DNA of 63,985 nucleotides, counting the filler, from Octopus bimaculoides (taxonomy: Eukaryota), in assembly GCF_001194135.2 (NCBI RefSeq). It is 5 parts of 5 records of this genome, joined end to end, with 100 filler letters (N's around TTAATTAATTAA, not from the genome) between each part and the next. Parts side by side here need not be neighbours in the genome. Positions count along the whole stretch, not along the records: positions 1 to 11,078 come from NC_069004.1; 4 more parts are not named here. One strand, given 5' to 3'. Position 1 is the first letter of the stretch. Each line of letters starts with the position of its first letter. A program made the position numbers and the translations under genes. Shown here piece by piece: positions 1 through 33,411 of this stretch. Under the pieces are notes generated by a model. That model saw only the letters and a list, made by a program, of their open reading frames with translations, made no database searches and was not told the origin of the DNA.

Positions 1-12
1 AGACAGACAGAC

Positions 13-102
<90 letters not shown>

Positions 103-122
103 TAGATAGATAGATAGATAGA
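1..122. repeat. (AGAC)n/(AGAT)n microsatellite, representative of dozens of di-, tri- and tetranucleotide arrays in the window
   Basis: Direct reading; most N gaps are bordered by such arrays. Confidence 0.95.
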
Positions 123-718
123 TGCACATACATGTATGCATGTGTTATAATCGGCGAACTGTACTTCATTGTAACTTGAGAACGCCACCTACTAAAGATA
201 TGTGAAGACGCTATCGTACTTTACTTGCATTATCATTTATCATTGTTGTCGCCGTCTTAGGTGGCGGTAGTGGTTACTGTAGTGGTAGTGGTGGTGACTT
301 TGGTCAGTATAGAATTAAGTTTAATCATTGTCCTGGTTAATATTTTCACAGCAGTAGTCTTACTACTGCTTTACGTTGCTATTGTTATTATTATTACTAT
401 TATTATTATTACTATTACTATTATTATTATTATTATTATTATTATTATCATCTTTGTTTACATATTTACGTACACAAATACTACTCCAGTATTGCCTGGA
501 AAGCGAAAAGAGGACACGCGCTCGGAAAGCGCAATGACATAAAAACTAAGTATATTTATATCCTGACCTGACCTAAACACGGGAAAAAAATAACCTTGAA
601 AAAAACAAAAGCAATCGAAGACAAAGCAAATGAAATAGAACAGGAAAATGTGCAAGAAATATCATCAGAAATTGTAAATCATTTATTTAAAAAAAGTTAA
701 TCTTTGCTATTTGCTGAG

Positions 719-1565
719 ATGGAAAACAATTTACCTGAAAATGAAGTGAAGTTGCCGTACTATGAGGATGTGAAATTACATAACATGAAACCTGTTGATG
801 ATAATAATTTGGACACGGTCAATAATTCGGAGGAAATTTATGAGAGAGACAATTTATTTGCCGATGCTCAACATGGCCATGAACAGCAAAAGTTAATGAA
901 TAATGACATGAAATCAATGAAAACAGACGACACAAAGAGAGAAAGTATATGTTGTTTTATATGGAAATATATCACGTTTAATCGGGGATTAAACATTGCA
1001 ACGCTCACATTTTTAGGGTCTCTTACCAATTCTTTGACAAATGCAGTAGCCCCTTATATTACATCACAAGTAAGCTCTTTAGAGAAACAGTTTGGATTGT
1101 CCAGTGCTGAGTTTGGATTCATTAATAGTGCCAATGATATAGGTTACTTGCTTATCATTCTTGCAGCTAGTCATTTCGCAAAAGATGCACATTTACCCAA
1201 ACTATTCTCTGTCTTAACATTATTTGTCGGTATCACTGTCGGTTGCATGAGCTTAACTTACCTCTTACGTCCAGTCAGTAATTTAGAACTGTTGAAAAAT
1301 TCAGATTCACTGAACGGCACCATTGGAAATAATTCTATAAACATTACAGCGGCACCAACCAATATATATCTGTGTTCTGCTGACAAGTCAACTATTGTTG
1401 AAGAAGCGAATTGTTCGATTGATCACGTAAAGAGTCGCTCTGTATATTTCTTGTTTGTCTTCTTCATGATAGTACTCGGAGTATGTAAAGGTCCAACGTC
1501 ATCCCTGTTACCAACCTATATTGATAATAATGTGCCGAAAAAACATCATTCTAATTTTTTTATCG
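719..1565 (+). CDS. SLCO: OATP/SLCO organic anion transporter, large first coding exon (N-terminus to TM4), copy 1
   Basis: ATG at 719 and an open frame to a phase-1 GTAAGT donor at 1566. QVSSLEKQFGLSSAEFGFINSANDIG...SHFA..AHLPK, a Cys-containing extracellular loop and PTYIDNNV...FIG match the OATP N-terminal half. Family call only; no orthologue assigned. Confidence 0.85.
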
Positions 1566-1675
1566 GTAAGTAAAACCTTGTTTCGTTTCTCACACGTCCG
1601 GCATCCTATATATTTGCATAACTATCACACACACACACATGTATGAATATGTCTATCTATCTATCTATCTATCTA

Positions 1676-1731
<56 letters not shown>

Positions 1732-4178
1732 TCTATACGTAACACACGGTATCATTATTATTGTTTTTCTCCGACACAGTTCATTTATGGCCGGTTTATG
1801 TGTAATTATTCCACATCTCCTGCTCGCAACTAAGAGATACAACACGTTTCTCAGCACATGAGCAGTTTCAAACACCGCAGGCATTTTTGCACTCCCTAAA
1901 CATATCTGGTATGCTCAAGATCTCGGGTATTGTAGCCAGAGCTTTTGAAATTGTTCCGAGTGCACTGATAACAAATAGGACGTTATTAACAGTTGCTCCT
2001 CAGTTTTGTTCAAAAAAGGAAGATGGCGGACGAAGATTGTTCGTCCGCTGAAAAGAACAGTCAATTAACCTCAGAATTGATAAGCCAAATTGTAAAAGTC
2101 AGTGACAACAACAACAACAGCAACAGCTGCAGCAGTAACAACAGCAATAGCAACAACAGCAACAACACAGCACGAGAAATGTATGAGACTAACTTTCCGC
2201 TCTTAGAAGTTTCAACGCTGCCACGGCGATCACAGGAACAACAAAGGGGAACAATGACAACAAAAAGCAACAACAACACTAGAGAGAAGACTGTCATCAC
2301 CGCCAGCAGCAACAGCAAGCCAAGCACCATCAGCACCACCACAACTACAACAAAAAGCATTGATACGAGAAACGAACACAGCGAGCAACGCCGAGGACAA
2401 GATGAACAAAACACCAGAAAAAAAAAAGCAACGACGTCTCCACCACCACCATCTTGCAGGCAGGGCCCTGTTAGAATTTTTTTCACGTCGAGTAGCCCGT
2501 CCAACTCAAGAGGTCCCTCAATAGTGTTCGTTTAAGGATGTTGAACAAAACACCCATGTTTCCAAAGGTGAATTATTCAAACACCAAAGAATTCCTCTCA
2601 ACACATGACTATGATGCTCCCACACCACTTCTGCTCGTGNNNNNNNNNNTGAATTATTCAAACACCAAAGAATTCCTCTCAACACATGACTATGATGCTC
2701 CCACACCACTTCTGCTCGTGATCAGAGATGCACATATCGTCAGCCACCAAGGGACGTGCTCAATTGGTTTATGGTGAAACAACTGACAAGCAAATCTGTG
2801 GTATTGAGCAGAATATTTGCCGTAGTCCATCTTTTATACCAAGACTAAACAATGTACATGATAACACTTCCAATCAGTTAGGATCAGGAGCCATTATTAC
2901 CGTTTTTCTTCTCATTATTAATTAGGCGGCAAACTGGCAGAATTGCAAGCAAGCCGGACAAAATACTTAGCGGAATTTCGTCCGTCTTNNNNNNNNNNNN
3001 NNNNNNNNNNNNNNNNNNNNNNNNNNNNNNNNNNNNNNNNNNNNNNNNNNNNNNNNNNNNNNNNNNNNNNNNNNNNNNNNNNNNNNNNNNNNNNNNNNNN
3101 NNNNNNNNNNNNNNNNNNNNNNNNNNNNNNNNNNNNNNNNNNNNNNNNNNNNNNNNNNNNNNNNNNNNNNNNNNNNNNNNNNNNNNNNNNNNNNNNNNNN
3201 NNNNNNNNNNNNNNNNNNNNNNNNNNNNNNNNNNNNNNNNNNNNNNNNNNNNNNNNNNNNNNNNNNNNNNNNNNNNNNNNNNNNNNNNNNNNNNNNNNNN
3301 NNNNNNNNNNNNNNNNNNNNNNNNNNNNNNNNNNNNNNNNNNNNNNNNNNNNNNNNNNNNNNNNNNNNNNNNNNNNNNNNNNNNNNNNNNNNNNNNNNNN
3401 NNNNNNNNNNNNNNNNNNNNNNNNNNNNNNNNNNNNNNNNNNNNNNNNNNNNNNNNNNNNNNNNNNNNNNNNNNNNNNNNGTTGGTGTATTTACGTTCCC
3501 GTAACGTAGCAGTTCGGCAAAAGAGACCGATAGAATAAGTACTAGGCTTACAAATAATAAGTCCTGGGGTCGATTTGCTCGACTAAAGGCGTTGCTCCAG
3601 CATGGCCGCAGTCAAATGACTGAAACAAGTAAAAGAGTAAAAGAGTATTAATGACGTTTGTCCTTTCATTAACGTCTTGGGAATCGAAACGGCGCTCCTA
3701 CGACCGCGAGTCCGCTGCCCTAACCACTGGGCCATTGCGCCTCCACATGTATTCATACACACACGTATATATACACGATAATAGAAGCACTTTTTTTTTA
3801 CGTTGTATATGTAAACTGATTGTCTCTTTATTAAATATTGGCTCTGGGCTAGCAATTTGGGGGGGGGGAGTAAATCGATTATATCAATCTCAGCGCTTGA
3901 CTAAGTACTTATTTTATCAAGGACGGAAGGCAAAGTCGATCTCGTCGGAATTTGAACTCAGAACGTAAAGATGAACGAAACTCCGCTAAGTAATTTGCCC
4001 GGCGTGCTAACAATTCTGCCTTGCATCTTTTTACTAAATATTACAGAAGTAAAGCGACAGGACAATTTCGTTATTGAGGCTAAATATGTAGTGTTTACTA
4101 AAATCAAATACTTGCAGGTTTAACAGCCTTTGCTAACACACACACACATACATTTATATATACATATATGTATAAATG

Positions 4179-4213
<35 letters not shown>

Positions 4214-4313
4214 NNNNNNNNNNNNNNNNNNNNNNNNNNNNNNNNNNNNNNNNNNNNNNNNNNNNNNNNNNNNNNNNNNNNNNNNNNNNNNNNNNNNNNN
4301 NNNNNNNNNNNNN

Positions 4314-5118
4314 GAGGATGTGAAATTACATAACATGAAACCTGTTGATGATAATAATTTGGAGACGGACAATGATTCGGGGGGTATTTTTGAGAGAGAC
4401 GATTTATTTACCGATGTTCATCATGGACAAGAACAACAACGAAAGTTAATGAATAATGACATGAAATCAATGAAAACAGACGACACAAATAAAGAAAGTA
4501 CATGTCGTTTTCTATGGAGATATATCACGTTTAATCGGGGATTAAACATTACAACGTTCACAATTTTAGGGGCTCTTTCCAATTCTATGACATATGCAGT
4601 AGCCAGCTATATTACATCGCAGGTAAGCTCTTTAGAGAAACAGTTCGGATTGTCCAGTGCTGAGTTTGGATTTATTAATAGTGCCAATGATATTGGTTTC
4701 TTGTTCGTCATTGTTCTAGCTAGTCATTTCGCAAGAGATGCACATTTACCCAAACTATTCTCATTCTTAACATTATTTGTCGGTCTCATTGTCGGTTGCA
4801 TAAGCTTAACTTACCTCTTACGTCCAGTCAGTAATTTAGAACTGTTGAAAAATTCAGACTCACTGAACGGCACCATTGGAAATAATTCTGTAAACATTAC
4901 AGCGGCACCAACCAATATATATCTGTGTTCTGATGACAAGTCAACTATTGTCGAAGAAGCGAATTGTGCGAGTAATTATGTAAAGAGTCACTCGGCATAT
5001 TTCTTGTTTGTCTTCTTCATGATAGTACTCGGAGTAAGTAAAGGCCCAAGATCATCCCTTTTCCCTACCTACGTCGATAACAATGTACCAGAAAAACACC
5101 ACACTGGTGCCTTTATCG
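4314..5118 (+). CDS. SLCO: OATP/SLCO large first coding exon, copy 2 (about 45 nt of the 5' end hidden in the N gap 4214-4313)
   Basis: Colinear paralogue of 764-1565, roughly 80% aa identity by eye, no stops, same phase-1 GTAAGT donor at 5119. Homology extends about 45 nt into the intron. Confidence 0.85.
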
Positions 5119-5623
5119 GTAAGTAATCAAAGATTCGAACAAAACCTTGCTTAGTTTCTCATACGTCCGACATGTCACNNNNNNNNNNNNNNNNNNNNNN
5201 NNNNNNNNNNNNNNNNNNNNNNNNNNNNNNNNNNNNNNNNNNNNNNNNNNNNNNNNNNNNNNNNNNNNNNNNNNNNNNNNNNNNNNNNNNNNNNNNNNNN
5301 NNNNNNNNNNNNNNNNNNNNNNNNNNNNNNNNNNNNNNNNNNNNNNNNNNNNNNNNNNNNNNNNNNNNNNNNNNNNNNNNNNNNNNNNNNNNNNNNNNNN
5401 NNNNNNNNNNNNNNNNNNNNNNNNNNNNNNNNNNNNNNNNNNNNNNNNNNNNNNNNNNNNNNNNNNNNNNNNNNNNNNNNNNNNNNNNNNNNNNNNNNNN
5501 NNNNNNNNNNNNNNNNNNNNNNNNNNNNNNNNNNNNNNNNNNNNNNNNNNNNNNNNNNNNNNNNNNNNNNNNNNNNNNNNNNNNNNNNNNNNATTATTAT
5601 TATTATTATCATTTTCATCATCA

Positions 5624-5658
<35 letters not shown>

Positions 5659-5790
5659 ATTATTTTAATGCTTAGCGTTATTTTGTATTGCCTTTCATCC
5701 TTTCGGGGTCGATAAATTAAGTACCAGTGAAGTACTGGTGTGGATGTGATCGACTTACCCCGCCCCCAAAATTTCAGGCCAGTAGAGCGG

Positions 5791-5856
<66 letters not shown>

Positions 5857-6775
5857 TCTTGTTTCTTTTCATTATAACTTTATTTCAGCTGCTTTAGTAC
5901 CGGGCATCCTCCGGAGGCCAAGAGTAGCAAGGACACTTTTGTTTTGCTATGCATATTAAAATTATCACCACATTTATTCCATTTTAGATGGAGAATGCTT
6001 TCCGTAGTATATGGGCTGTACCCATCAAGATTATCTTTTGTAGTTCACGGAGATTGGAGTTACCAGGGAGTTGCTTAATATACTCCTCAGCTCCCTTCTT
6101 TATCATTTCCAACCCACCAATTACCACTGGTATTATCGTAGTACTAAGCTTCCACATTTTTGTAATTTCAATTTGCAGATCTTTAGAGTGAGAAAGCTTT
6201 TCGTATTCCTTTCTCGAGACATTTTGATCTTGTGGGACTGACATATCTATTAACAGACAAGTTCCTCTGTTGTAGTCCTTGATCACAACGTCTGGTCGAT
6301 TGGAGTCAATTTCTCTGTCTGTTTGTATTGGGAAGTTCCAAAGGATAGTGACGCCCTCACCATTTACTACATCCTCTGGATGGGATTTAATTTTGTAGTA
6401 TTTACAAGCATTCCAGTGGATGTACTGCCCTAGTCTGTCATGCCTTATGTGATACTCCTTTTCAATGAGGACTGGGCAGCCAGAAACAACATGATCAATT
6501 GTCTCTGAATTTTCCGCAAATTCTGCAGAAGCGGTAAGATCCATCTTTATGGACGTTTGCATGGTAGTTTCTGATAGGTAAGTTCTGATCTTGCGCTGCA
6601 ATAACAAAACTTTCTGTTTCTCTTTTCAGACCTGTCCCTTGTAGCCATTGGTGTGTTAGGTTTTGATCAATATCTGTCTTGGACAGGTGGTTTGGGTATT
6701 TTCCATGCAGGAGTTTGCCTTTCCAGTTGTCTTCGATATTATTCATGAAAGCCTTCTTTGCTTTTTGTTTGATGT
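5857..6775 (-). mobile_element. 5'-truncated R4/Dong-like non-LTR retrotransposon remnant (zinc knuckle plus restriction-like endonuclease)
   Basis: W.GKLLHGKY...WL...LKRETESFVIAAQDQ, CRICGKF/ETIDHVVSGC (frameshifted), RPDVVI..CLLIDMSVP...KEYEK, GTAHILRK; the 3' UTR runs into (TAA)n. Confidence 0.85.
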
Positions 6776-6784
6776 TTATTATTA

Positions 6785-6992
6785 TCATTATTATTTTATG
6801 TTTGGCTCCAAGTCTCACCCAGAGACCTCAAGAGACAACAAGTTAGAAGTTCATGCTGTTGGTGTTATGCCTAGGGTGCCATATATTTGGTTTTGCACAT
6901 AGTGTTGTTCTAGAGAATGTTTAAGAAACTATAAGAAAATTACGTTTGTTTTAAAATTTGAAATTACATAGTATTTTACGTGGGCAGTTCCC
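6785..6992 (-). mobile_element. Second short 3' end of a related R4/Dong-like element
   Basis: Minus strand begins ggaactgcccac (GTAH) and ends in an AAT-rich tail; flanked by (ATT)n. Confidence 0.5.
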
Positions 6993-7069
6993 TATTATTA
7001 TTATTATTATTATCATTATTATTATTATTATTATTGTTGTTGTTGTTATTATTATCCAACTGTCTGCCT

Positions 7070-7460
7070 AGTGTATAGTGAAGATCGACACACCACCTTC
7101 CCCTAGCAAAGAAGGAAGGCAAATCTTTCTCTGCTTATTGGATATGGCAAAAGAGGCTGTGTGGTGGATCTGCCAGAATGGTTTGAAGACATTCACTTTT
7201 ACTATCTGACCAAGCCTTCATCAGTTTCTTAGAATATCATACGAAAAAGAAGGTGAGGGAAGAGAGGGAGGTGGTGCCCTCTAGTGTGTTTACCAAAAGG
7301 TGGTCGACAGTGGCAAGACTGGTGAGACCGAATGGACCGACTCTGAGTTTGCTTTTCTAAGCAGAAGGAAAGGAACTAGGAGAGGGCACTTTCTTATGCC
7401 TTGGTAATGGCAGAGTAATCCGGGATTTTTGCGTAGAGTTTACCCCGGATTACCCTAAGT
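7070..7460 (+). mobile_element. Probable L1/Tx1-clade LINE 3' remnant
   Basis: Frameshifted reading IFLCLLDMAKEAVWWICQNGLK / FLEYHTKKKVREEREVVPSSVFTKRWSTVARL resembles L1/Tx1 ORF2 C-termini (from recall, not searched). Confidence 0.4.
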
Positions 7461-7859
7461 GAACTGTCCAGCCAGTGGAGATTCTATTTATGTATCTATT
7501 TATTATTTATTTATTTCTCTAATTTCTATTATATATCCTCAGTTTGGAATTCACTTAGATCATTTCTTTTGGAATATATATATATATATATACACACACA
7601 CATACAAAGATAGAGAGTCAACAAGTGAGATCGAAAGTATCTCAATGTAGAAAACACTTTGTAGCTCTCAAATGGTTTGAACTTGCACTCCGATATCTTC
7701 ACCGATGACCAAGTGAGTAGGGTAAAGAGTAAATATATGGGGAATCCAAATGAGCAGATATGGAGACTAATTCAAATAAACAGGGTTTTCATGTACAAAA
7801 TGTATATAGATGCATAGATGTAAAAAGACAAGACAGACTTAAAGTTTTCAAAGTATAAA

Positions 7860-7893
<34 letters not shown>

Positions 7894-9327
7894 NNNNNNN
7901 NNNNNNNNNNNNNNNNNNNNNNNNNNNNNNNNNNNNNNNNNNNNNNNNNNNNNNNNNNNNNNNNNNNNNNNNNNNNNNNNNNNNNNNNNNNNNNNNNNNN
8001 NNNNNNNNNNNNNNNNNNNNNNNNNNNNNNNNNNNNNNNNNNNNNNNNNNNNNNNNNNNNNNNNNNNNNNNNNNNNNNNNNNNNNNNNNNNNNNNNNNNN
8101 NNNNNNNNNNNNNNNNNNNNNNNNNNNNNNNNNNNNNNNNNNNNNNNNNNNNNNNNNNNNNNNNNNNNNNNNNNNNNNNNNNNNNNNNNNNNNNNNNNNN
8201 NNNNNNNNNNNNNNNNNNNNNNNNNNNNNNNNNNNNNNNNNNNNNNNNNNNNNNNNNNNNNNNNNNNNNNNNNNNNNNNATATATATAATACTTTATATA
8301 GTTTATCATAAAAAATGTTGAGTCTGCCTTCTCTTTTTACATATATAGGCACATGCATGGCTGTGTGGTAAGAAGCTTGTGGGCGAATTGTCCCCTCTAT
8401 GTTTAGACCCTTTTCGTCAATAAATAAATAAGAAGCTTGTGTAGGGCGATGTGCGTCTCCCTACACATTTGCGTAGGAGAATGGTCAGTAGAAAGGTGTT
8501 TAACTGGTAGTTTGAAGTATGTGTGTGTGTGTGTATGTACATGCAGTGTGTATCTGTGTGTTTTGTTCGCAGTGTGTGTGTGTGTGTGAGTGTATGTATG
8601 TATGTGTACGCGTGAGGTTGTGTGTGGGGTTATGTCTGTGGAGTAAATGTACGTTACTCTGTGTGTGTGTGCGTGTATGTATAATTTTGTGTGTGTATGT
8701 ATGAGTGTGTGTTGTGTGTGTATGGAAGGTATGTGTGGGTTCATTTGCATGTGTGTGTGTGTGTATGTACGTGTGTGTATGTGTGTGTGTATATGTGCAT
8801 ATATGTGTTGTATGTGTGTGGTGTGTATGGGAGGTATATGCACGTTCATGTGTGTGTACGGGTGCGTTTATTTTTTCGTGTGTGTGTGTGTGTGTATGTG
8901 TGTGTGCGTCTATATAGAAATATAAATTATAATAAATTATGAAAAATAAGATTGAAAGGGGATAATTGCATGTACGTAAGTGAGCAGTCAATTTTCTACG
9001 CGGAAATCTTACTACACGTGATATTATTAGATAAACGACTACATTACATAATATCAGCACAGACAATAAAGTAATTAAACATTGGTCTAATTAAGAGATA
9101 ACAATTGTCGTTAATAGCACAATTAATCGCACAATTAATCGTTAAGACTTTGTAACTAACTAACACAATAAGAAAAAATATATCAGAAAGTTATACCCCA
9201 CTCCTCCAGATTTAAACACGATAAAATTTACATGCTTTAAAATATTACAATGACTACCTCGTTCTAAAATTTGACATCTAAGATTAATTGTAAATAAACA
9301 ATATAAATAACGACTACTTTTATTTTA

Positions 9328-9934
9328 TTTTACTTGTTTCAGTCATTTGACTGCGGCCATGCTGGAGCACCGCCTTTTAGTCGAGCAAATCGACCCCAGG
9401 ACTTATTCTTTAGAAGCCTAGTACTTATTCTATCGATCTCTTTTGCCGAACCGCTAGCTTACGGGGACGTAAACACACCAGCATCGGTTGTCAAGCGATG
9501 TTGGGGGGACAAACACAGACACACAAACACATACACACAAACACATACATATATATATATATACATATATACGACGGGCTTCTTTCAGTTTCCGTCTACC
9601 AAATCCACTCACAAGGCTTTGGTNNNNNNNNNNGATCTCTTTTGCCGAACCGCTAGCTTACGGGGACGTAAACACACCAGCATCGGTTGTCAAGCGATGT
9701 TGGGGGGACAAACACAGACACACAAACACATACACACAAACACATACATATATATATATATACATATATACGACGGGCTTCTTTCAGTTTCCGTCTACCA
9801 AATCCACTCACAAGGCTTTGGTCTGCCCGAGGCTATAGTAGAAGACACTTGCCCAAGGTGCCACGCAGTGGGAATGAACCTGGAACCATGTGGTTGGTAA
9901 GCAAGCTACTTACCACACAGCCACTCCTGCGCCT
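9328..9934 (-). mobile_element. tRNA-derived SINE family 1 (internal TA/TG tract, GAAACAAGTAAAA tail)
   Basis: Many homologous copies: about 3481-3648, 16705-16950, 35418-35506, 37661-37898, 48040-48244, 57001-57160, 61008-61290 and 63258-63490. This copy includes an assembly duplication around the 10-N gap. Confidence 0.85.
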
Positions 9935-10450
9935 ATGGTGGTACATATTTAATAGTTCGGATAGTTACTAATTATCAGTTAATGAATATAAACAAACAGG
10001 AATTCATCCCAATTCTCTGGGACATGTTAGGGCGAAATTAAATCCAATACTACCAGTTGCAAAATGACGCTTTTAAAATCTTTGTGGTTCACTCCAAAAT
10101 GTTGTCTTCATCCCGATGAGTTGGCTACCCCTTCATTACTTGTCCCTTATCTCAACTAAACTTTATAAATGCATTTTTAAACTCATTTCTGATAAAGGTT
10201 GAGAAAGCCTCGCTCCCACCCAACTACATTTCACTATCTCTCGCTCTCTTTCTTTTTTCATTCTTTGTTTCTTTCTTTTCTCTCTCTCTCTCTCTCTCAG
10301 TCTCTCTCTTTCTCGACACACATATATTGCTCTGACGAAGCTATGAGATATCGAATTAGCATACAACTCTAGATCCCCAGTTCCTTATAGTAGAAACAGT
10401 TGTAAGCTAATGAAAATATATATGTACCTACATAGGTGTATATGTGCGTG

Positions 10451-10543
<93 letters not shown>

Positions 10544-10546
10544 TCT

Positions 10547-10707
10547 CTGAGTGGTTAGCGTTAGGAAGGGCATCCAGGTGTAGAAACTCTGCCAAATTTA
10601 GATTGGAGCCTTGTGTTGCCATCCGGTTTCACCAGTCCTCAGTCAAATCGTCCAACCCATGCTAGCATGGAAAGCGGACGTTAAACGATGATGATGATGA
10701 TGATGAT
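10547..10707 (+). mobile_element. (GAT)n-tailed retroposon 3' end, probably RTE-associated
   Basis: CCAACCCATGCTAGCATGGAAAGCGGACGTTAAACGATGATG recurs at about 12620-12720, 13243-13305, 15000-15062 and 26960-27012. Confidence 0.65.
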
Positions 10708-10875
10708 ATATGCATGTGTGTCTGTGTGAGATTGTGTATGTTTCCGTCCCTTTGTTTTGACATCACATTATAGTTGTAAACTATTGTCACTGTCATACAA
10801 GCAGTGTCAATATTCTGCGAGAGAATATCTGGCAAAAGTGAAATATGAGAGCCACTGCCTGGTACTGCATCAGGA

Positions 10876-10907
<32 letters not shown>

Positions 10908-11078
10908 GTTCAGTAGTTTTATTTTTATAACGTGCTTTCACTTCACTACCGAGCGCAGCTCTGTGCGCCTTGGGTATGTGCTGTGGTTTGCTGTGGTGTT
11001 CTTATGGTTACTGTATTGAAAGTGTTTTGCGTGGGATGTGTGCTGTGCCCAGTAGTGCAATTTTCTGTATGTTATATA

Positions 11079-19541: not shown

Positions 19542-19774
19542 AACCAATGTTACATTGGCGCAACAACATTGTCATTATTAGCCACTACAATCACAGTCAC
19601 CATATACTACTACATAAACTACACTGTGTCATCACTACCACTACCAACAACAGCAGATACATTGCACTTCATATAATGAATAGTTGATGGACTTGCTAGA
19701 AACAGCAGTCAAATATTCCCCCGATCCTATTGCACAGTGTCAAAAGAGGGAAGAACACACTGAGTGAGAGAGTG

Positions 19775-19843
19775 AAAGAGAGGGGGAGAGAAAGAGAGAG
19801 AGAGAAAGAACGAGAGTGAAAGAAAGGAGAGAGAGAGGGAGAG

Positions 19844-19874
<31 letters not shown>

Positions 19875-20304
19875 GAGAGGGGTAGAGAGGGAGAGTGAGA
19901 GAAAAGAGAGAAAGAGAGAGAGAGAAAAGAGAGAGAGGGAGAGAGAGAAAAGAGAGAGAGAGAAAGAGGGAGAGAAAAGAGAGAAAGAGGGAGAGAAAAG
20001 AGAGAAAAAGAGAGAAAAGAGAGAGAGGGGGAGAGAGAGAAAGAGAGAGAGGGAGAGAGAGAAAGAGAGAGAGGGAAAGAAAGAGAGAGAAAAGAGAGAG
20101 AGAGGGAGAGAGAGAAAAGAGAGAGAGAGAAAGAGGGAGAGAAAAGAGAGAGAGAGAAAAGAGAGAGAGAGAAAAGAGAGAGAGAGAAAAGAGAGAGAGA
20201 GAAAAGAGAGAGGGAGAGAGGGAAAGAAAGAGAGAGAGAGGGAGAGAGAGAGAAAAGAGAGAGAGAGAGAGAAAAGAGAGAGAGAGAGAGGGAGAGAGAG
20301 AGAA
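19775..20304. repeat. About 530-bp GA-rich polypurine compound microsatellite
   Basis: Almost purine-only plus strand built of GAGAGAGAAAA-type units. Confidence 0.9.
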
Positions 20305-20905: not shown

Positions 20906-22191
20906 AAAGAAAATCTGCCTCCATGGAAGAGTGAATGTAAAAATGTTGATGATCATACAATACACAGACACATAGGTACATTTTTATATATTTTTGAAAA
21001 CATATAGACATAGATATACACACACACACATACAGACAGGCTGTGGAGTTGAAGTTTAGGAGTCAGAAACAATTAAGGGGGAGTCGGTAAAACTATACCG
21101 ACTCTGACTCACAGTACCTTTATTTTTTTATATAAACCTATATAACCTATAGGCATACTCAAAGTACAAGCGTACACATATGCTTTATGAGATATGCAGA
21201 CCACAATCACTTGATTACATAAAGAGGAGTTGGAGGTACCAATCGTACAGGAGTCAGAGTCAGAGTCGAAGTTTTTGTTTTGACTCCACAGCCCTGCATA
21301 CAGACGTGATATATATTATGCATGTCAGAATAAGTATATATATANNNNNNNNNNNNNNNNNNNNNNNNNNNNNNNNNNNNNNNNNNNNNNNNNNNNNNNN
21401 NNNNNNNNNNNNNNNNNNNNNNNNNNNNNNNNNNNNNNNNNNNNNNNNNNNNNNNNNNNNNNNNNNNNNNNNNNNNNNNNNNNNNNNNNNNNNNNNNNNN
21501 NNNNNNNNNNNNNNNNNNNNNNNNNNNNNNNNNNNNNNNNNNNNNNNNNNNNNNNNNNNNNNNNNNNNNNNNNNNNNNNNNNNNNNNNNNNNNNNNNNNN
21601 NNNNNNNNNNNNNNNNNNNNNNNNNNNNNNNNNNNNNNNNNNNNNNNNNNNNNNNNNNNNNNNNNNNNNNNNNNNNNNNNNNNNNNNNNNNNNNNNNNNN
21701 NNNNNNNNNNNNNNNNNNNNNNNNNNNNNNNNNNNNNNNNNNNNNNNNNNNNNNNNNNNNNNNNNNNNNNNNNNNNNNNNNNNNNNNNNNNNNNNNNNNN
21801 NNNNNNNNNNNNNNNNNNNNNNNNNNNNNNNNNNNNNNNNNNNNNNNNNNNNNNNNNNNNNNNNNNNNNNNNNNNNNNNNNNNNNNNNNNNNNNNNNNNN
21901 NNNNNNNNNNNNNNNNNNNNNNNNNNNNNNNNNNNNNNNNNNNNNNNNNNNNNNNNNNNNNNNNNNNNNNNNNNNNNNNNNNNNNNNNNNNNNNNNNNNN
22001 NNNNNNNNNNNNNNNNNNNNNNNNNNNNNNNNNNNNNNNNNNNNNNNNNNNNNNNNNNNNNNNNNNNNNNNNNNNNNNNNNNNNNNNNNNNNNNNNNNNN
22101 NNNNNNNNNNNNNNNNNNNNNNNNNNNNNNNNNNNNNNNNNNNNNNNNNNNNNNNNNNNNNNNNNNNNNNNNNNNNNNNNNNNNNNNNNNN

Positions 22192-29133: not shown

Positions 29134-29760
29134 TTAGGATCAGCTGAAAAGTTCATAGGCTGACCAAGATTCCCTAATGGAATGTGACAAAATGAGGTTT
29201 ATTTTTCAACTGTGCTTGGACCTAATTAACGAAGAAAGCTTTCATTCCATTGGTCAAAAAAGTCATCAATAGCAGATATAACATCATCATCACTGCAATA
29301 CTGGTTCCCAGCTTCAAATTCCGCCAAGGTTGACTTTGCCTTTCATCCTTTCGGGGTCGATAAATTAAGTACCCATTGCATACTGGGATCGATCTAATCG
29401 ACTGACCTCCTCCCCAAAAATTTTGGGCCTTGTGCTTAGAGTAGATAAAAAGAAATAAAATACTGGTTCCCAGCCTAGTGTTTTTTCATGTTGGGGAAAC
29501 AGATGATGATAGTCAGATGGGGCCAAATCAGGAGAATAGAGGACAGCGATCAACCAGTTCAAAGCCACAGTCACACACCACAGTAGCCACTGAAACTAAA
29601 GACCCATGTGCTGGAATGTTGTCCTGATGAAATAAGACCCCTTTCATCAGTTTTCCAGCACATTTGGTCTTGATAGCCATTCGTAACTGCCTCAGCAGAA
29701 TTTCACAGCTCTAGCATCACTCCTTCATAGCCAGCCTGTGAACGTTTTAGCCCTCCCTTG
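29134..29760 (-). mobile_element. Internally deleted mariner with both TIRs and a nested SINE (29313-29458)
   Basis: YSPDLAPSDYH motif; imperfect TIRs (GCTGAAAAGTTCATAGGCTG vs GCTAAAACGTTCACAGGCTG); TA flanks; the SINE is bounded by a 16-bp direct repeat AATACTGGTTCCCAGC (29297, 29459). Confidence 0.78.
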
Positions 29761-30067
29761 TATAAATATAGAGTTTATAGAGTGGACACAGTGAAGAATA
29801 TTACTGGAGGTATGGTGAAGGGTGAGAAATACCATCGGATAGGCAGGTGGCGGAAGATGAGAGTAGTGTTGATAAAAAAAAGTTGGGTTGATGATATATA
29901 ACCCCCAGCCCCCACTAATCTTGGATGATTTAATCAGAGAAAAAACAACACTATTACTACTACTGACCATGGTAATGATGCTGCTACTGATGATGATGAT
30001 ATAAAGTGAGGAGAAACAATGTCATCAGGTCAGCAGACATTGGAGATTCAAATGAAATAAGGAAGGT

Positions 30068-30146
<79 letters not shown>

Positions 30147-30497
30147 TTAATGCCCTTTATATATAATTATATATATATATGTGTGTGTAAGTGTGTGTGT
30201 GTGTGTGTGTGTGTATAGGTGAGTATGTATGTGTGTGTGTGTGTATGTGTGTAGGTAACTTAGTATATACATATGTGTGTGTAGATATGTATGTATATAT
30301 ATATGTGTGTGTGTGTGTGTAGGTAAGTATCTATATATGTATATTTGTGTGTAGGTAAGTATGTATGTATATATGTATGTGTATAGATAACTTTGTATAT
30401 ACATATGTGTGTAGATAAGTATGCATGTATATATATATATATATATGTGTGTGTGGGTAAGTATGTATATATATATATGTGTGTGTAAGTATGTATG

Positions 30498-30529
<32 letters not shown>

Positions 30530-31861
30530 GGTGTGTGTAACCTTTCCTCTTCCTTATTCTCTCTATCATTACTATCACCATAATTTTTCTTTTATTTGGT
30601 TTGTTTTTCAGGCAATGATAACCATCACCGCCTCCATCACCATCACCGCCTCCATCACCATCACCACCACCACCACCACCACCACCACCACCACTATCAC
30701 TACCACCACCACCGCCATCATCATCATCACCATTGCAGCCATTCATTCGTTTGTTTTTTTGCATATTTTTTTTCTCTAAGGTGGGAAGTAATAATTCTGT
30801 TTTATTTGTGGTTATTAAGTTATTTAGATAACGAGGCCTAATTAGAGGGGAGGTATAGGTGAGTGGAGTGGAGTGTGGTGTGTGTGTGTGTGTGTGTGAG
30901 TGGAGTGTAGCCCTCATAGACCATCAAGCAGGAAAGTGAAAGTAGGAGGAAGAGCGTGAGTGATATGTGTGAATGTATGTATGTATGTATGTGTGTGTTT
31001 GTGCAAATGTGTATTTGCACAAGTGTGTGTGTTTGCGCATGTGTGTGTTTGTGTTTGTATGTGTGTATCTAACTAGTGAAAAGCCATCCACTACCCCCCC
31101 CCAATTTTATCTTATTTTTGCACAGAGGAGGGGTGAAGAGAGAGAGGGAGAGATGGACAGGTTAACTCATCGTCTGTGGTGGTCATGGTCGGGTCGGTGG
31201 TGTAGTGCTAGCACAGTGATGTTGGTGGAACAAAGATGGTGATGATGATGGAACAGGGTGATGGTAGTATAGGATACTAGTGATGGTGGTGGTGGTGGTG
31301 GAGGAATAAGATACTTGTGATGATGGTGGTGGTGGTATAAGGTACTAGTGATGATGATGATGGTGGTGGTGGTGGTGGTGTAGGATAGTGGTGGTGGTAG
31401 TGAAACAGTGTGGTGATGGTACAGTGTAGATGTAGTGTAATAGTGGTATAAGTAATTGTGGAGGAGACAGAGTTGATGCTGTAGTACAATAGTAGCATCA
31501 GTATTGGTGGTGACGGCAGTGTAGGTGTGGTGTTGGTGTAGGGGATTTCAGGGAGAGAACAGAGAGCAGGGGTGGGGTGGCGCAGAAAATGAGACACCCT
31601 CTGCCAGCCACATCTAAGGGTACCACTTCTTCCCCCTCCCCATCCCTGCCATTGTAGCTGTGGTGAGGGGGAAGTGGCCGAGTGGCTCCTTGGGGACATT
31701 CTGTGTAAAACAGATAAAAATGGTGACCCCTAAACAAGCTTTGATGCTTCAACAACCAGGAATATTTCTGTCTCTCAACATTATTTTTGGTTTTTGAGAT
31801 GTTTTTTTGGTCTTTTGTTGCTGAGCATATGTGTGTGAGTGTATATAAATAAATACACACA

Positions 31862-31899
<38 letters not shown>

Positions 31900-33411
31900 N
31901 NNNNNNNNNNNNNNNNNNNNNNNNNNNNNNNNNNNNNNNNNNNNNNNNNNNNNNNNNNNNNNNNNNNNNNNNNNNNNNNNNNNNNNNNNNNNNNNNNNNN
32001 NNNNNNNNNNNNNNNNNNNNNNNNNNNNNNNNNNNNNNNNNNNNNNNNNNNNNNNNNNNNNNNNNNNNNNNNNNNNNNNNNNNNNNNNNNNNNNNNNNNN
32101 NNNNNNNNNNNNNNNNNNNNNNNNNNNNNNNNNNNNNNNNNNNNNNNNNNNNNNNNNNNNNNNNNNNNNNNNNNNNNNNNNNNNNNNNNNNNNNNNNNNN
32201 NNNNNNNNNNNNNNNNNNNNNNNNNNNNNNNNNNNNNNNNNNNNNNNNNNNNNNNNNNNNNNNNNNNNNNNNNNNNNNNNNNNNNNNNNNNNNNNNNNNN
32301 NNNNNNNNNNNNNNNNNNNNNNNNNNNNNNNNNNNNNNNNNNNNNNNNNNNNNNNNNNNNNNNNNNNNNNNNNNNNNNNNNNNNNNNNNNNNNNNNNNNN
32401 NNNNNNNNNNNNNNNNNNNNNNNNNNNNNNNNNNNNNNNNNNNNNNNNNNNNNNNNNNNNNNNNNNNNNNNNNNNNNNNNNNNNNNNNNNNNNNNNNNNN
32501 NNNNNNNNNNNNNNNNNNNNNNNNNNNNNNNNNNNNTATATGCAAATATATTTGTATATATAAATGTATATATCATATATCACATGATATACATTTGTAA
32601 TCATGTGTGTATGTGAGAATAGCTACATATATGCAAAAACATACACGCACACACACCAACACACATGCACGCGTGTGCTAACAAAGATACACACAAAAGC
32701 GTTTCTGTGAGCGTCGATGTATATGTGTGCGTAGATGTTTATATATGCAGCTCAAGTGAACTATAAAAGCTATAATACCTATCATTATAGAGTAGGGGTC
32801 ATTAAGATAATGAAGCAGTCGGTATTCACCATAAAGGGACAGTGACAACGAAGGATGTTGGCTCTAATTACATACTGTCTGCGATGGGGTCTGTTGTAGC
32901 GAGGATGTTTTTTTCCTTTTTCGTTGGGGTTTTTTTTGTCAGTTTTGGTGGAGGAGGGGTACATCAGACAGTTGTGTGTGTGTATGTGTTCTCTCATGCA
33001 TATATAAGCATATACACTAACATATAGATACATTATATATATATATATATATATACCCAGACACACATAAACTGTATAGTGTGTACATGCATGCATGACA
33101 GCACATATATAAATAATATACAAATAGGAGCTAATGAGGGGGTCTCTATGTGGTCATTCAACCTGCAAAAATAGCAGGCAAATTCCCTGAAATCACATAA
33201 AAAAATAACGATAAATTGAAAAAAAAAAAATCCCAGGATGATCATAGGTGGAACATGTTTGATCAGATATTTACTTTGTCAGAGCAGACCTGTGGCTAAA
33301 CAATAACATATACACACATGTATACATAAATATACATGCATTAACATACATTTATTATACACACTCAATGATACAGTCAATTCTCTCTATATGACTAAAT
33401 GTATATATATA

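What the first reader, a model, noticed from the sequence alone, without database searches (positions are those of the whole stretch)
719..5165. Tandem SLCO first exons with no intervening downstream exons: possible variable-first-exon transporter locus
Seen: two intact paralogous exons of about 850 bp, each encoding the N-terminus to TM4 and ending at the same phase-1 GTAAGT donor. They are only about 2.7 kb apart, and I found no exon for the rest of an OATP between them or before the scaffold end. Known: UGT1A and the vertebrate clustered protocadherins splice alternative large first exons onto shared constant exons, and vertebrate SLCO genes normally spread this region over several exons. 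Inference: this may be a cassette array producing OATP variants with different N-terminal bundles on a common C-terminal half. A 492-N gap (2989-3480) could hide sequence but is too small for the roughly 400 remaining codons plus introns.
Basis: partly seen in the sequence, partly recalled or inferred. Interest (0 to 1): 0.78.

Follow-up and report, generated by a model that had tools for sequence, protein, structure and literature searches.

The report
Octopus OATP gene, duplicated first exon
An octopus organic-anion transporter (OATP/SLCO) gene carries two tandem copies of its large first coding exon ahead of one shared set of later exons, and the same layout in a distant octopod (Argonauta) shows it is a real, old feature that probably gives two transporter variants with different N-terminal membrane bundles.

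Summary
The window is Octopus bimaculoides chromosome CM046624.1. Copy 1 (719-1565) is a complete ATG-to-donor exon. Copy 2 (4314-5118) sits alone on an 865-bp contig between gaps, and its first 15 codons are not assembled. Both match Pfam OATP (E=3e-20) and both end at a phase-1 G|GTAAGT donor. They are 89.8% identical in nucleotides and 81% in amino acids.

The "missing" constant exons lie beyond the piece. There is a single TM5 exon 9.4 kb past copy 2, then a nested intronless PDE gene, then the TM7/8, TM9 and Kazal exons.

The gapless Argonauta hians assembly has the same layout: two intact first exons 19.5 kb apart, no OATP exon between them, one downstream set and the same nested PDE. 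This argues strongly against misassembly and against two separate genes.

Regional dS between the copies runs from 0.04 to 0.64, and rooted site patterns are mixed. This indicates a duplication older than the O. bimaculoides/O. sinensis split, patched by gene conversion. The oldest segment has omega 0.23.

RefSeq already models both exons as isoforms X1 and X2. Transcript-level use of each exon was not testable here. This is a two-member variable-5'-exon locus, not a UGT1A- or protocadherin-scale array.

The parts
719..1565 (+). Copy 1 (exon 1a). ATG at 719 and 282 codons plus 1 nt. It encodes the cytoplasmic N-terminus, TM1-TM3, the large extracellular loop 2 and TM4 of an OATP.
   Evidence: ORF and translation. 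Pfam OATP E=3e-20. 100% identical to residues 1-283 of RefSeq XP_052832328.1. Aligns to solved OATP1C1/1B1/1B3/2A1 structures, about residues 45-253 when exon 2 is appended. Hydrophobic segments at 132-150, 157-186 and 236-265.
1566..1604 (+). Donor GTAAGT (1566-1571) and the first ~40 nt of the intron, homologous to the sequence after copy 2.
   Evidence: Alignment A1. Sequence context TTATCG|GTAAGT.
4214..4313 (.). Assembly gap (100 N, estimated) hiding the first 15 codons, the ATG and the upstream flank of copy 2.
   Evidence: Gap map. The alignment shows that the copy 2 contig begins at the position equivalent to copy 1 base 764.
4314..5118 (+). Copy 2 (exon 1b), visible part: 268 codons plus 1 nt, open throughout, with the same domain content as copy 1.
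   Evidence: 100% identical to residues 1-262 of XP_014774754.1 and to residues 16-283 of XP_052832327.1.
5119..5178 (+). Donor GTAAGT (5119-5124) and the start of the intron. It carries a 16-nt insertion relative to copy 1. The contig ends at 5178.
1605..4213 (.). Spacer between the copies. It holds microsatellites, a low-complexity ORF (1993-2535), SINE-like repeats and two gaps, and no OATP-coding sequence.
   Evidence: tblastn with the full-length orthologue. Repeat matches elsewhere in L001 and L002. No Pfam hit for ORF 1993-2535.

Best explanation
This is the 5' end of a single octopod OATP/SLCO gene in which a unit of about 1 kb was duplicated in tandem. The unit holds the large first coding exon with a few tens of bases on either side.

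Each copy supplies the N-terminus and TM1-TM4, and each ends at the same phase-1 donor. Either copy can therefore be joined to the one downstream TM5 exon and the rest of the transporter (TM6-TM12 and the Kazal-like loop). The result would be two isoforms that differ mainly in TM1, TM2 and the TM4/intracellular-loop region.

Shown here:
- the two exons, their shared donor phase and the single downstream exon set;
- the absence of OATP exons between the copies;
- conservation of this layout in Argonauta;
- a duplication older than the O. bimaculoides/O. sinensis split, with later patchy gene conversion;
- purifying selection in the oldest, unconverted segment.

Inferred, not shown:
- that both exons are actually transcribed and spliced in a mutually exclusive way;
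- that copy 2 has its own ATG inside the gap;
- that the two N-terminal bundles give different substrate or regulatory properties.
For: 1. Both exons are OATP and share phase and donor.

2. There is a single constant set. The TM5 exon is at L001 23867-23953, with acceptor tttttcag and donor GTAAGA, phase 1 to 1. TM7/8 is at L001 33295-33462. TM9 and Kazal exons are at L004 about 19700-19903 and 21527-21640. No OATP exon lies between the copies.

3. Argonauta hians locus L003 has no N. Exon A is 10001-10890 and exon B runs from an ATG at 29456 to 30291. Both are intact and both end G|GTAAGT in phase 1. They are 86% identical in nucleotides and 74% in amino acids. Nothing OATP-like lies between them. 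They are followed by single exons 2 and 3, a nested intronless PDE gene, and the remaining exons, in the same order and orientation as in Octopus.

4. Rooted site patterns, with Argonauta as outgroup, are mixed. Copy 1 and O. sinensis share derived states at 19 aa and 29 nt sites. Copy 1 and copy 2 share them at 8 aa and 18 nt sites. The third pattern occurs at only 1 aa and 3 nt sites.

5. dS between the copies is 0.146, 0.043 and 0.641 in three segments, against 0.273, 0.162 and 0.064 between copy 1 and O. sinensis. This is an old duplication with later conversion. In the old segment (residues 233-282) omega is 0.23, with an excess of synonymous changes at p=0.0017.

6. Copy 2 is closer to Argonauta than copy 1 is (57% against 50% amino-acid identity), so it is not simply decaying.

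7. Independent NCBI models join each exon to the same exon 2.
Against: - No RNA evidence was examined. The RefSeq models are computational, begin at the ATG without a UTR, and are truncated by read-through into intron 2.
- Isoform X1 is chimeric: 15 aa of copy 1 followed by copy 2.
- The start codon and promoter region of copy 2 are in a gap.
- Over the whole exon, the changes assigned to the copy 2 side in the unrooted three-sequence comparison (17 synonymous, 43 non-synonymous) are not distinguishable from neutral (p=0.12). An open frame after 60 random substitutions is expected 10-20% of the time.
- The gapless 14.5-kb O. sinensis contig holds only the copy 1 orthologue and no second copy in the 11.5 kb downstream.
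- In Argonauta the A-versus-B omega is 0.67, only marginally below 1 (p=0.057).
- The TM6 exon is missing from the O. bimaculoides assembly, so intactness of the whole gene is not shown there.
Confidence: 0.68

Rival explanations
1. Same architecture but a different mechanism. The two copies are internal, mutually exclusive exons that follow a shared non-coding 5' exon and promoter, and are not alternative first exons with separate promoters. Including both would shift the frame, because each is 1 mod 3 in length.
For: The duplicated unit carries very little upstream sequence. In Argonauta it is only about 48 nt before the ATG, and the homology starts right after a YAG (TTAG or GTAG). In O. 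bimaculoides an AG preceded by a T-rich run abuts the ATG of copy 1. Gene models start exactly at the ATG, so the true 5' end is unknown.
Against: No upstream exon has been identified. Splice-site-like strings of this kind are common by chance. Nothing here distinguishes the two mechanisms.
Confidence: 0.25
2. Copy 2 is a dead duplicated exon lying in intron 1. It was retained by chance and by gene conversion from copy 1, and is never used productively.
For: The whole-exon substitution pattern on the copy 2 side is compatible with neutrality (p=0.12), and open-frame retention is not significant. The start codon is not visible. The current RefSeq isoform that uses copy 2 is chimeric. No second copy is seen in the O. 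sinensis contig.
Against: In the segment that escaped conversion (dS 0.64) omega is 0.23 (p=0.0017), so both copies were constrained over a long time. Copy 2 keeps more ancestral residues than copy 1. The donor is intact. Argonauta keeps two intact exons, each with an ATG and a donor.
Confidence: 0.15
3. Assembly artefact. The 865-bp copy 2 contig is either a paralogue from elsewhere or a divergent haplotype, wrongly scaffolded next to copy 1.
For: Copy 2 is an isolated contig bounded by gaps, and the v2 assembly adds no independent sequence. The same scaffold shows unmerged contig overlaps at its 10-N gaps.
Against: The gapless Argonauta assembly has the same order: exon, second exon, TM5 exon, PDE, remaining exons. 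Divergence of 10% overall, with regional dS up to 0.64, is far beyond allelic. Patchy gene conversion between the copies implies physical proximity.
Confidence: 0.03
4. Two complete tandem OATP genes, each with its own downstream exons, with the exons of the first gene hidden in gaps.
For: There are gaps of 10, 492 and 100 N between the copies, and their sizes are only estimates.
Against: In Argonauta the constant part spans about 21 kb and 9 exons, and none lies in the gapless 19.5 kb between A and B. In Octopus, only one copy each of the TM5, TM7/8, TM9 and Kazal exons was found, all downstream of copy 2.
Confidence: 0.02

Closest known systems
UGT1A locus and vertebrate clustered protocadherins (variable first exons spliced to shared constant exons)
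   Same: Tandem paralogous large 5' coding exons, each with an ATG and a donor of identical phase, precede one shared set of constant exons with none in between. The variable part carries the presumed specificity-determining region, here TM1-TM4. This comparison rests on established knowledge of those loci, not on a test run here.
   Different: There are only two variable exons, not 9-13 or dozens. Separate promoters are not shown, and only about 48 nt of upstream homology exists in Argonauta. The copies are homogenised by gene conversion. The family is an MFS-type transporter.
Mutually exclusive exon pairs created by tandem exon duplication (for example SLC25A3 exons 3A/3B, ion-channel and insect ABCC/MRP exon clusters)
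   Same: The origin is tandem duplication of one exon. The copies have equal length and phase, and the length is not a multiple of 3, so double inclusion would break the frame. The two alternatives encode the same structural segment with substitutions in the transmembrane helices.
   Different: Those are internal exons, usually 50-200 nt. Here the unit is an 847-nt exon that contains the start codon and a third of the protein.
[quoted passage not shown]
   Same: An OATP whose N-terminal part can come from a different genomic segment than its C-terminal part. LST-3TM12 is described as a functional hybrid of SLCO1B3 and SLCO1B7 sequences (PMC7214651, citing Malagnino et al. 2018).
   Different: LST-3TM12 arises by read-through between two whole neighbouring genes. 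Other human SLCO alternative first exons, recalled from memory and not checked here, are mostly non-coding or truncate the N-terminus. None is a duplicated full TM1-TM4 coding exon. Full-text searches found no description of such an arrangement for SLCO/OATP or for this octopus locus.

Membership tests
OATP/SLCO transporter family (Pfam PF03137) | Significant match to the OATP profile above the curated cut-off | tested here: met
   Both copies score 72.5 bits against a cut-off of 25.8, E=3e-20, profile positions about 10-168 of 545. phmmer hits to solved OATP1C1, 1B1, 1B3 and 2A1 structures reach E down to 4.8e-11.
OATP/SLCO transporter family (Pfam PF03137) | Kazal-like cysteine-rich extracellular loop between TM9 and TM10 | tested here: met
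   A downstream exon at L004 21527-21640 encodes SLIDDCNCDVRQYFPICGSDQQNYFSPCHAGC, 74% identical to Argonauta residues 532-569. The RefSeq C-terminal fragment there carries OATP plus a weak Kazal_2 hit.
OATP/SLCO transporter family (Pfam PF03137) | Family signature W-x-G-x-W-W-x-G at the extracellular loop 3/TM6 border, and a complete set of 12 TM helices | tested here: inconclusive
   The signature is present in the Argonauta orthologue (NWIGAWWIGF; exon at L003 34984-35223). The TM6 exon was not found in the O. bimaculoides assembly, which has gaps of 824 and 633 N in the expected interval.
Variable-first-exon loci (UGT1A / clustered protocadherin type) | Two or more tandem paralogous 5' exons, each with its own start codon | tested here: inconclusive
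   Copy 1 has an ATG at 719. The first 15 codons of copy 2 lie in gap 4214-4313. In Argonauta both copies have an ATG.
Variable-first-exon loci (UGT1A / clustered protocadherin type) | All variable exons end at a donor of the same phase, compatible with one downstream acceptor | tested here: met
   G|GTAAGT in phase 1 at 1566 and 5119. The acceptor of the TM5 exon is at L001 23867 and restores a Gly codon. The same holds in Argonauta.
Variable-first-exon loci (UGT1A / clustered protocadherin type) | One shared set of constant exons downstream, and none between the variable exons | tested here: met
   tblastn with the 725-aa orthologue against L001, L004 and the gapless L003.
Variable-first-exon loci (UGT1A / clustered protocadherin type) | Each variable exon has its own promoter and is observed spliced to the constant exons in transcripts | not testable with these tools
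   No RNA data are available. The only support is computational RefSeq models X1, X2 and XP_014774754.1. Upstream homology between the Argonauta copies is only about 48 nt.
Mutually exclusive tandem-duplicated exons | Adjacent homologous exons of the same length class and phase, whose joint inclusion would break the frame | tested here: met
   Copy 1 is 847 nt. Copy 2 would be 850 nt if its missing 45 nt are like those of copy 1, given its 3-nt insertion. Both are 1 mod 3. The existence of an upstream shared exon was not testable.

The most novel reading that the evidence does not exclude
Octopods have kept, for a long time and under concerted evolution, an OATP gene with two alternative N-terminal four-helix bundles on a common C-terminal half. 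The pair predates the O. bimaculoides/O. sinensis split and possibly the Octopus/Argonauta split. The bundles would be chosen by alternative promoter or by mutually exclusive splicing. That would be a UGT1A-like way of diversifying the substrate pocket of an MFS transporter, which to my knowledge has not been described for the SLCO family.
Probability: 0.45. Interest if true: 0.6.

Novelty: new member of a known kind. Interest (0 to 1): 0.5.

Why it matters
OATPs are multispecific uptake carriers, and the substrate cavity is lined by helices from both halves of the protein. If a gene can swap the whole TM1-TM4 bundle, it offers a natural experiment on how the N-terminal domain sets substrate range, regulation or trafficking. 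It would also extend the variable-5'-exon strategy, known from UGT1A and the protocadherins, to a solute carrier in a lineage known for unusual transcript diversification.

There are practical consequences for annotation. The current gene models are wrong in several ways: the gene is split into an N-terminal and a C-terminal "gene", both isoforms end in intron read-through, one isoform is chimeric, and the second exon is unannotated in Argonauta.

Tried and rejected
- **Chromosome-level assembly.** I used the v2 O. bimaculoides assembly to resolve the gaps. It contains the window verbatim with the same N runs, so it adds nothing inside the scaffold.
- **O. sinensis as outgroup only.** This made copy 2 look three times faster-evolving and near neutral. 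The reading was overturned once Argonauta was added as the root, because copy 2 holds the ancestral states.
- **Orthology between Octopus and Argonauta copies.** I looked for positional orthology (copy 1 with A, copy 2 with B) and found 0 and 1 supporting sites against 62 species-specific sites. A single ancient duplication with concerted evolution cannot be separated from independent duplications.
- **Annotated C-terminal half.** A word-index protein search for an O. bimaculoides C-terminal protein found none with high identity. The exons were found through the neighbouring PDE gene instead.
- **O. sinensis PDE contig.** A search of L005 for exon 2 at 3 mismatches or fewer, and for a long ORF, was negative.
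- **Rfam.** A scan of the piece gave nothing.
- **Apparent TM7/8 duplicate in Argonauta.** An apparent second copy of the TM7/8 exon was an alignment artefact.
Full report
**Identity of the window.** The piece is Octopus bimaculoides. Window 1-11078 is 100% identical to GCA_001194135.2 chromosome CM046624.1 (L001 9283-20360), including the same N runs. The chromosome-level release therefore adds nothing inside the scaffold. The piece consists of seven contigs: 1-2639, 2650-2988, 3481-4213, 4314-5178, 5593-7893, 8280-9623 and 9634-11078.

**Gap tests.**
- Neither exon contains a gap.
- The 10-N gap at 2640-2649 is flanked by an exact 71-nt overlap, and the gap at 9624-9633 by an exact 189-nt overlap. 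Both are unmerged contig joins.
- Gap 4214-4313 follows a (TG)n run and cuts off the 5' end of copy 2. The contig begins at the base equivalent to copy 1 position 764, which is codon 16.
- Copy 2 therefore stands alone on an 865-bp contig between two gaps. Its start codon is unread, and its placement rests on scaffolding.

**The two exons.**
- Copy 1 is 719-1565: an ATG, 282 codons and 1 nt.
- Copy 2 is 4314-5118: 268 codons and 1 nt.
- Both are open and both are followed by G|GTAAGT in phase 1.
- Both match Pfam OATP at E=3e-20 over profile positions about 10-168 of 545.
- With the next exon appended, the sequence aligns to residues about 45-253 of solved OATP1C1, 1B1, 1B3 and 2A1 structures.
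- The copies are 89.8% identical in nucleotides and 81% in amino acids, with one in-frame 3-nt indel. Overall dS is 0.175, dN is 0.094 and omega is 0.53.
- Homology continues about 40 nt into the intron.

That holds for copy 1 only.

**Where the rest of the gene is.** Protein searches returned three NCBI models.
- XP_052832328.1 (isoform X2) is copy 1 joined to GLMVTFSILGNGLIFVLGGFISQIPVDLE.
- XP_014774754.1 (older annotation) is copy 2 joined to the same peptide.
- XP_052832327.1 (isoform X1) is the first 15 residues of copy 1, then copy 2, then the same peptide.

That peptide is an 87-nt TM5 exon at L001 23867-23953. It has acceptor tttttcag and donor GTAAGA, phase 1 to phase 1, and lies 9.4 kb past copy 2 and beyond the piece's edge. 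The current models end by reading through into the next intron (GKNYSLPQGSDF*), so they are truncated.

A phmmer search of 1.8 billion representative proteins found a full-length 725-aa relative from Argonauta hians, GAB1609125.1, at 54% identity. Using it as a probe gave the following.
- The TM7/8 exon is at L001 33295-33462, downstream of an intronless GAF-PDE gene at 29441-32362.
- Further exons matching residues 464-525 and the Kazal region 532-569 are in L004.
- RefSeq calls this C-terminal part a separate 315-aa gene.
- Only the TM6 exon is missing, most likely in one of the gaps after exon 2.
- No OATP exon lies between the two copies or elsewhere in the piece.

**Comparative test.** The Argonauta locus (L003, 65 kb, no N) has the same architecture.
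- Exon A is 10001-10890 and exon B runs from an ATG at 29456 to 30291. Both are intact and both end G|GTAAGT in phase 1. They are 86% identical in nucleotides and 74% in amino acids.
- No OATP exon lies in the 19.5 kb between them.
- They are followed by single exons 2 and 3, the nested intronless PDE, and the remaining seven exon hits.
- The duplicated unit is about 1 kb and includes only about 48 nt upstream of the ATG.
- The order and orientation of every element match O. bimaculoides.

This is strong evidence against a mis-scaffolded copy 2 and against two complete genes.

**Age and selection.** With O. sinensis alone as the comparison, copy 2 looked fast-evolving and nearly neutral. The sequence came from L002, a gapless 14.5-kb contig with a single copy. 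Substitutions on the copy 2 side were 17 synonymous and 43 non-synonymous (p=0.12 against neutrality). An open frame after 60 random substitutions is expected 10-20% of the time.

Rooting with Argonauta reverses that reading.
- Copy 2 is closer to Argonauta than copy 1 is: 57% against 50% amino-acid identity.
- Copy 1 and O. sinensis share derived states at 19 aa and 29 nt sites, mainly in TM1, TM2 and the TM4-to-end region.
- Copy 1 and copy 2 share derived states at 8 aa and 18 nt sites.
- The third pattern occurs at only 1 aa and 3 nt sites.

Regional dS shows the same mosaic:

| Residues | Copy 1 vs copy 2 | Copy 1 vs O. sinensis |
|---|---|---|
| 76-165 | 0.146 | 0.273 |
| 166-232 | 0.043 | 0.162 |
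| 233-282 | 0.641 | 0.064 |

The duplication is therefore much older than the split between the two Octopus species, and parts of the exon have since been homogenised by gene conversion. In the old segment, omega is 0.23, with a significant excess of synonymous changes (p=0.0017). Both copies have therefore been constrained as coding sequence.

Between Octopus and Argonauta there is no positional orthology signal: 0 and 1 supporting sites against 62 species-specific sites. A single ancient duplication with concerted evolution and two independent duplications cannot be told apart.

**Interpretation.** The best-supported reading is one OATP gene with two alternative, tandemly duplicated 5' coding exons feeding one constant region. 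The structure, its conservation and the selection signal are shown. The actual use of both donors, the start codon of copy 2 and any functional difference are inferred.

The amino-acid differences between the copies cluster in TM1, TM2 and the TM4/loop end. From general knowledge of OATP structures, these helices line the substrate cavity, which suggests a change in specificity. I did not test that.

Whether the exons are alternative first exons with their own promoters, or mutually exclusive exons behind a shared 5' exon, is open. The short upstream homology and the AG just before it fit the second option, but they are weak evidence.

**Comparison with what is known.** The layout works like UGT1A or the clustered protocadherins on a minimal scale of two exons. 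It also resembles mutually exclusive exon pairs born by tandem exon duplication.

[quoted passage not shown] That transcript arises by read-through between whole genes. Full-text searches found no description of a duplicated TM1-TM4 coding exon in any SLCO gene, or of this octopus locus.

NCBI's isoforms X1 and X2 already encode the idea computationally, so the finding is not new to the databases, only undescribed and poorly modelled. I rate it a new member of a known kind, of moderate interest.

Noticed in passing
window 2640-2649 and 9624-9633: Both 10-N gaps are flanked by exact repeats of the same sequence, 71 nt and 189 nt. Overlapping contig ends were left unmerged, so the assembly carries artificial local duplications here.
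   Followed up: yes
L001 29441-32362; L003 38307-41270: An intronless 973-aa GAF + PDEase_I gene (RefSeq 'cGMP-specific 3',5'-cyclic phosphodiesterase-like') is nested, on the same strand, in an intron of the OATP gene in both O. bimaculoides and Argonauta. A 67%-identical 1091-aa paralogue lies on the same chromosome. It may be an old retrogene.
   Followed up: partly
L001 10001-23991 and L004 16674-22922: RefSeq splits the OATP into an N-terminal gene and a separate 315-aa C-terminal gene. Both N-terminal isoforms end in read-through of intron 2. The TM6 exon is absent from the assembly.
   Followed up: yes
window 719-763 plus 4314-5118: RefSeq isoform X1 (XP_052832327.1) is a chimera: the first 15 codons of copy 1 are joined to copy 2 across a non-canonical 'intron' that ends in the gap. 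It may reflect transcript evidence for a copy 2 mRNA with the same N-terminus, but this could not be checked.
   Followed up: partly
window 1993-2535: This is a low-complexity Asn/Ser/Thr-rich ORF. UniProt A0A0L8GP64 (455 aa) splices it onto copy 1. It has no Pfam match, and the region is about 85% conserved in O. sinensis, like its surroundings. The join is probably a mis-prediction.
   Followed up: partly
window 5984-6818, minus strand: Two adjoining ORFs of 207 and 107 aa resemble the C-terminal part of a non-LTR retrotransposon ORF2. That resemblance is my impression only. The only Pfam hit is a sub-threshold one.
   Followed up: partly
window 3483-3647 and 9315-9480 (inverted); also L001, L002: SINE-like repeat copies about 90% identical, present several times in the O. 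bimaculoides and O. sinensis loci. They account for most of the non-microsatellite cross-matches.
   Followed up: no
L002 (O. sinensis VCDQ01009465.1) 2134-2988: Only the copy 1 orthologue is present on this gapless 14.5-kb contig. No second exon copy lies in the 11.5 kb downstream, although the duplication predates the species split. The O. sinensis second copy is either further away or lost.
   Followed up: partly
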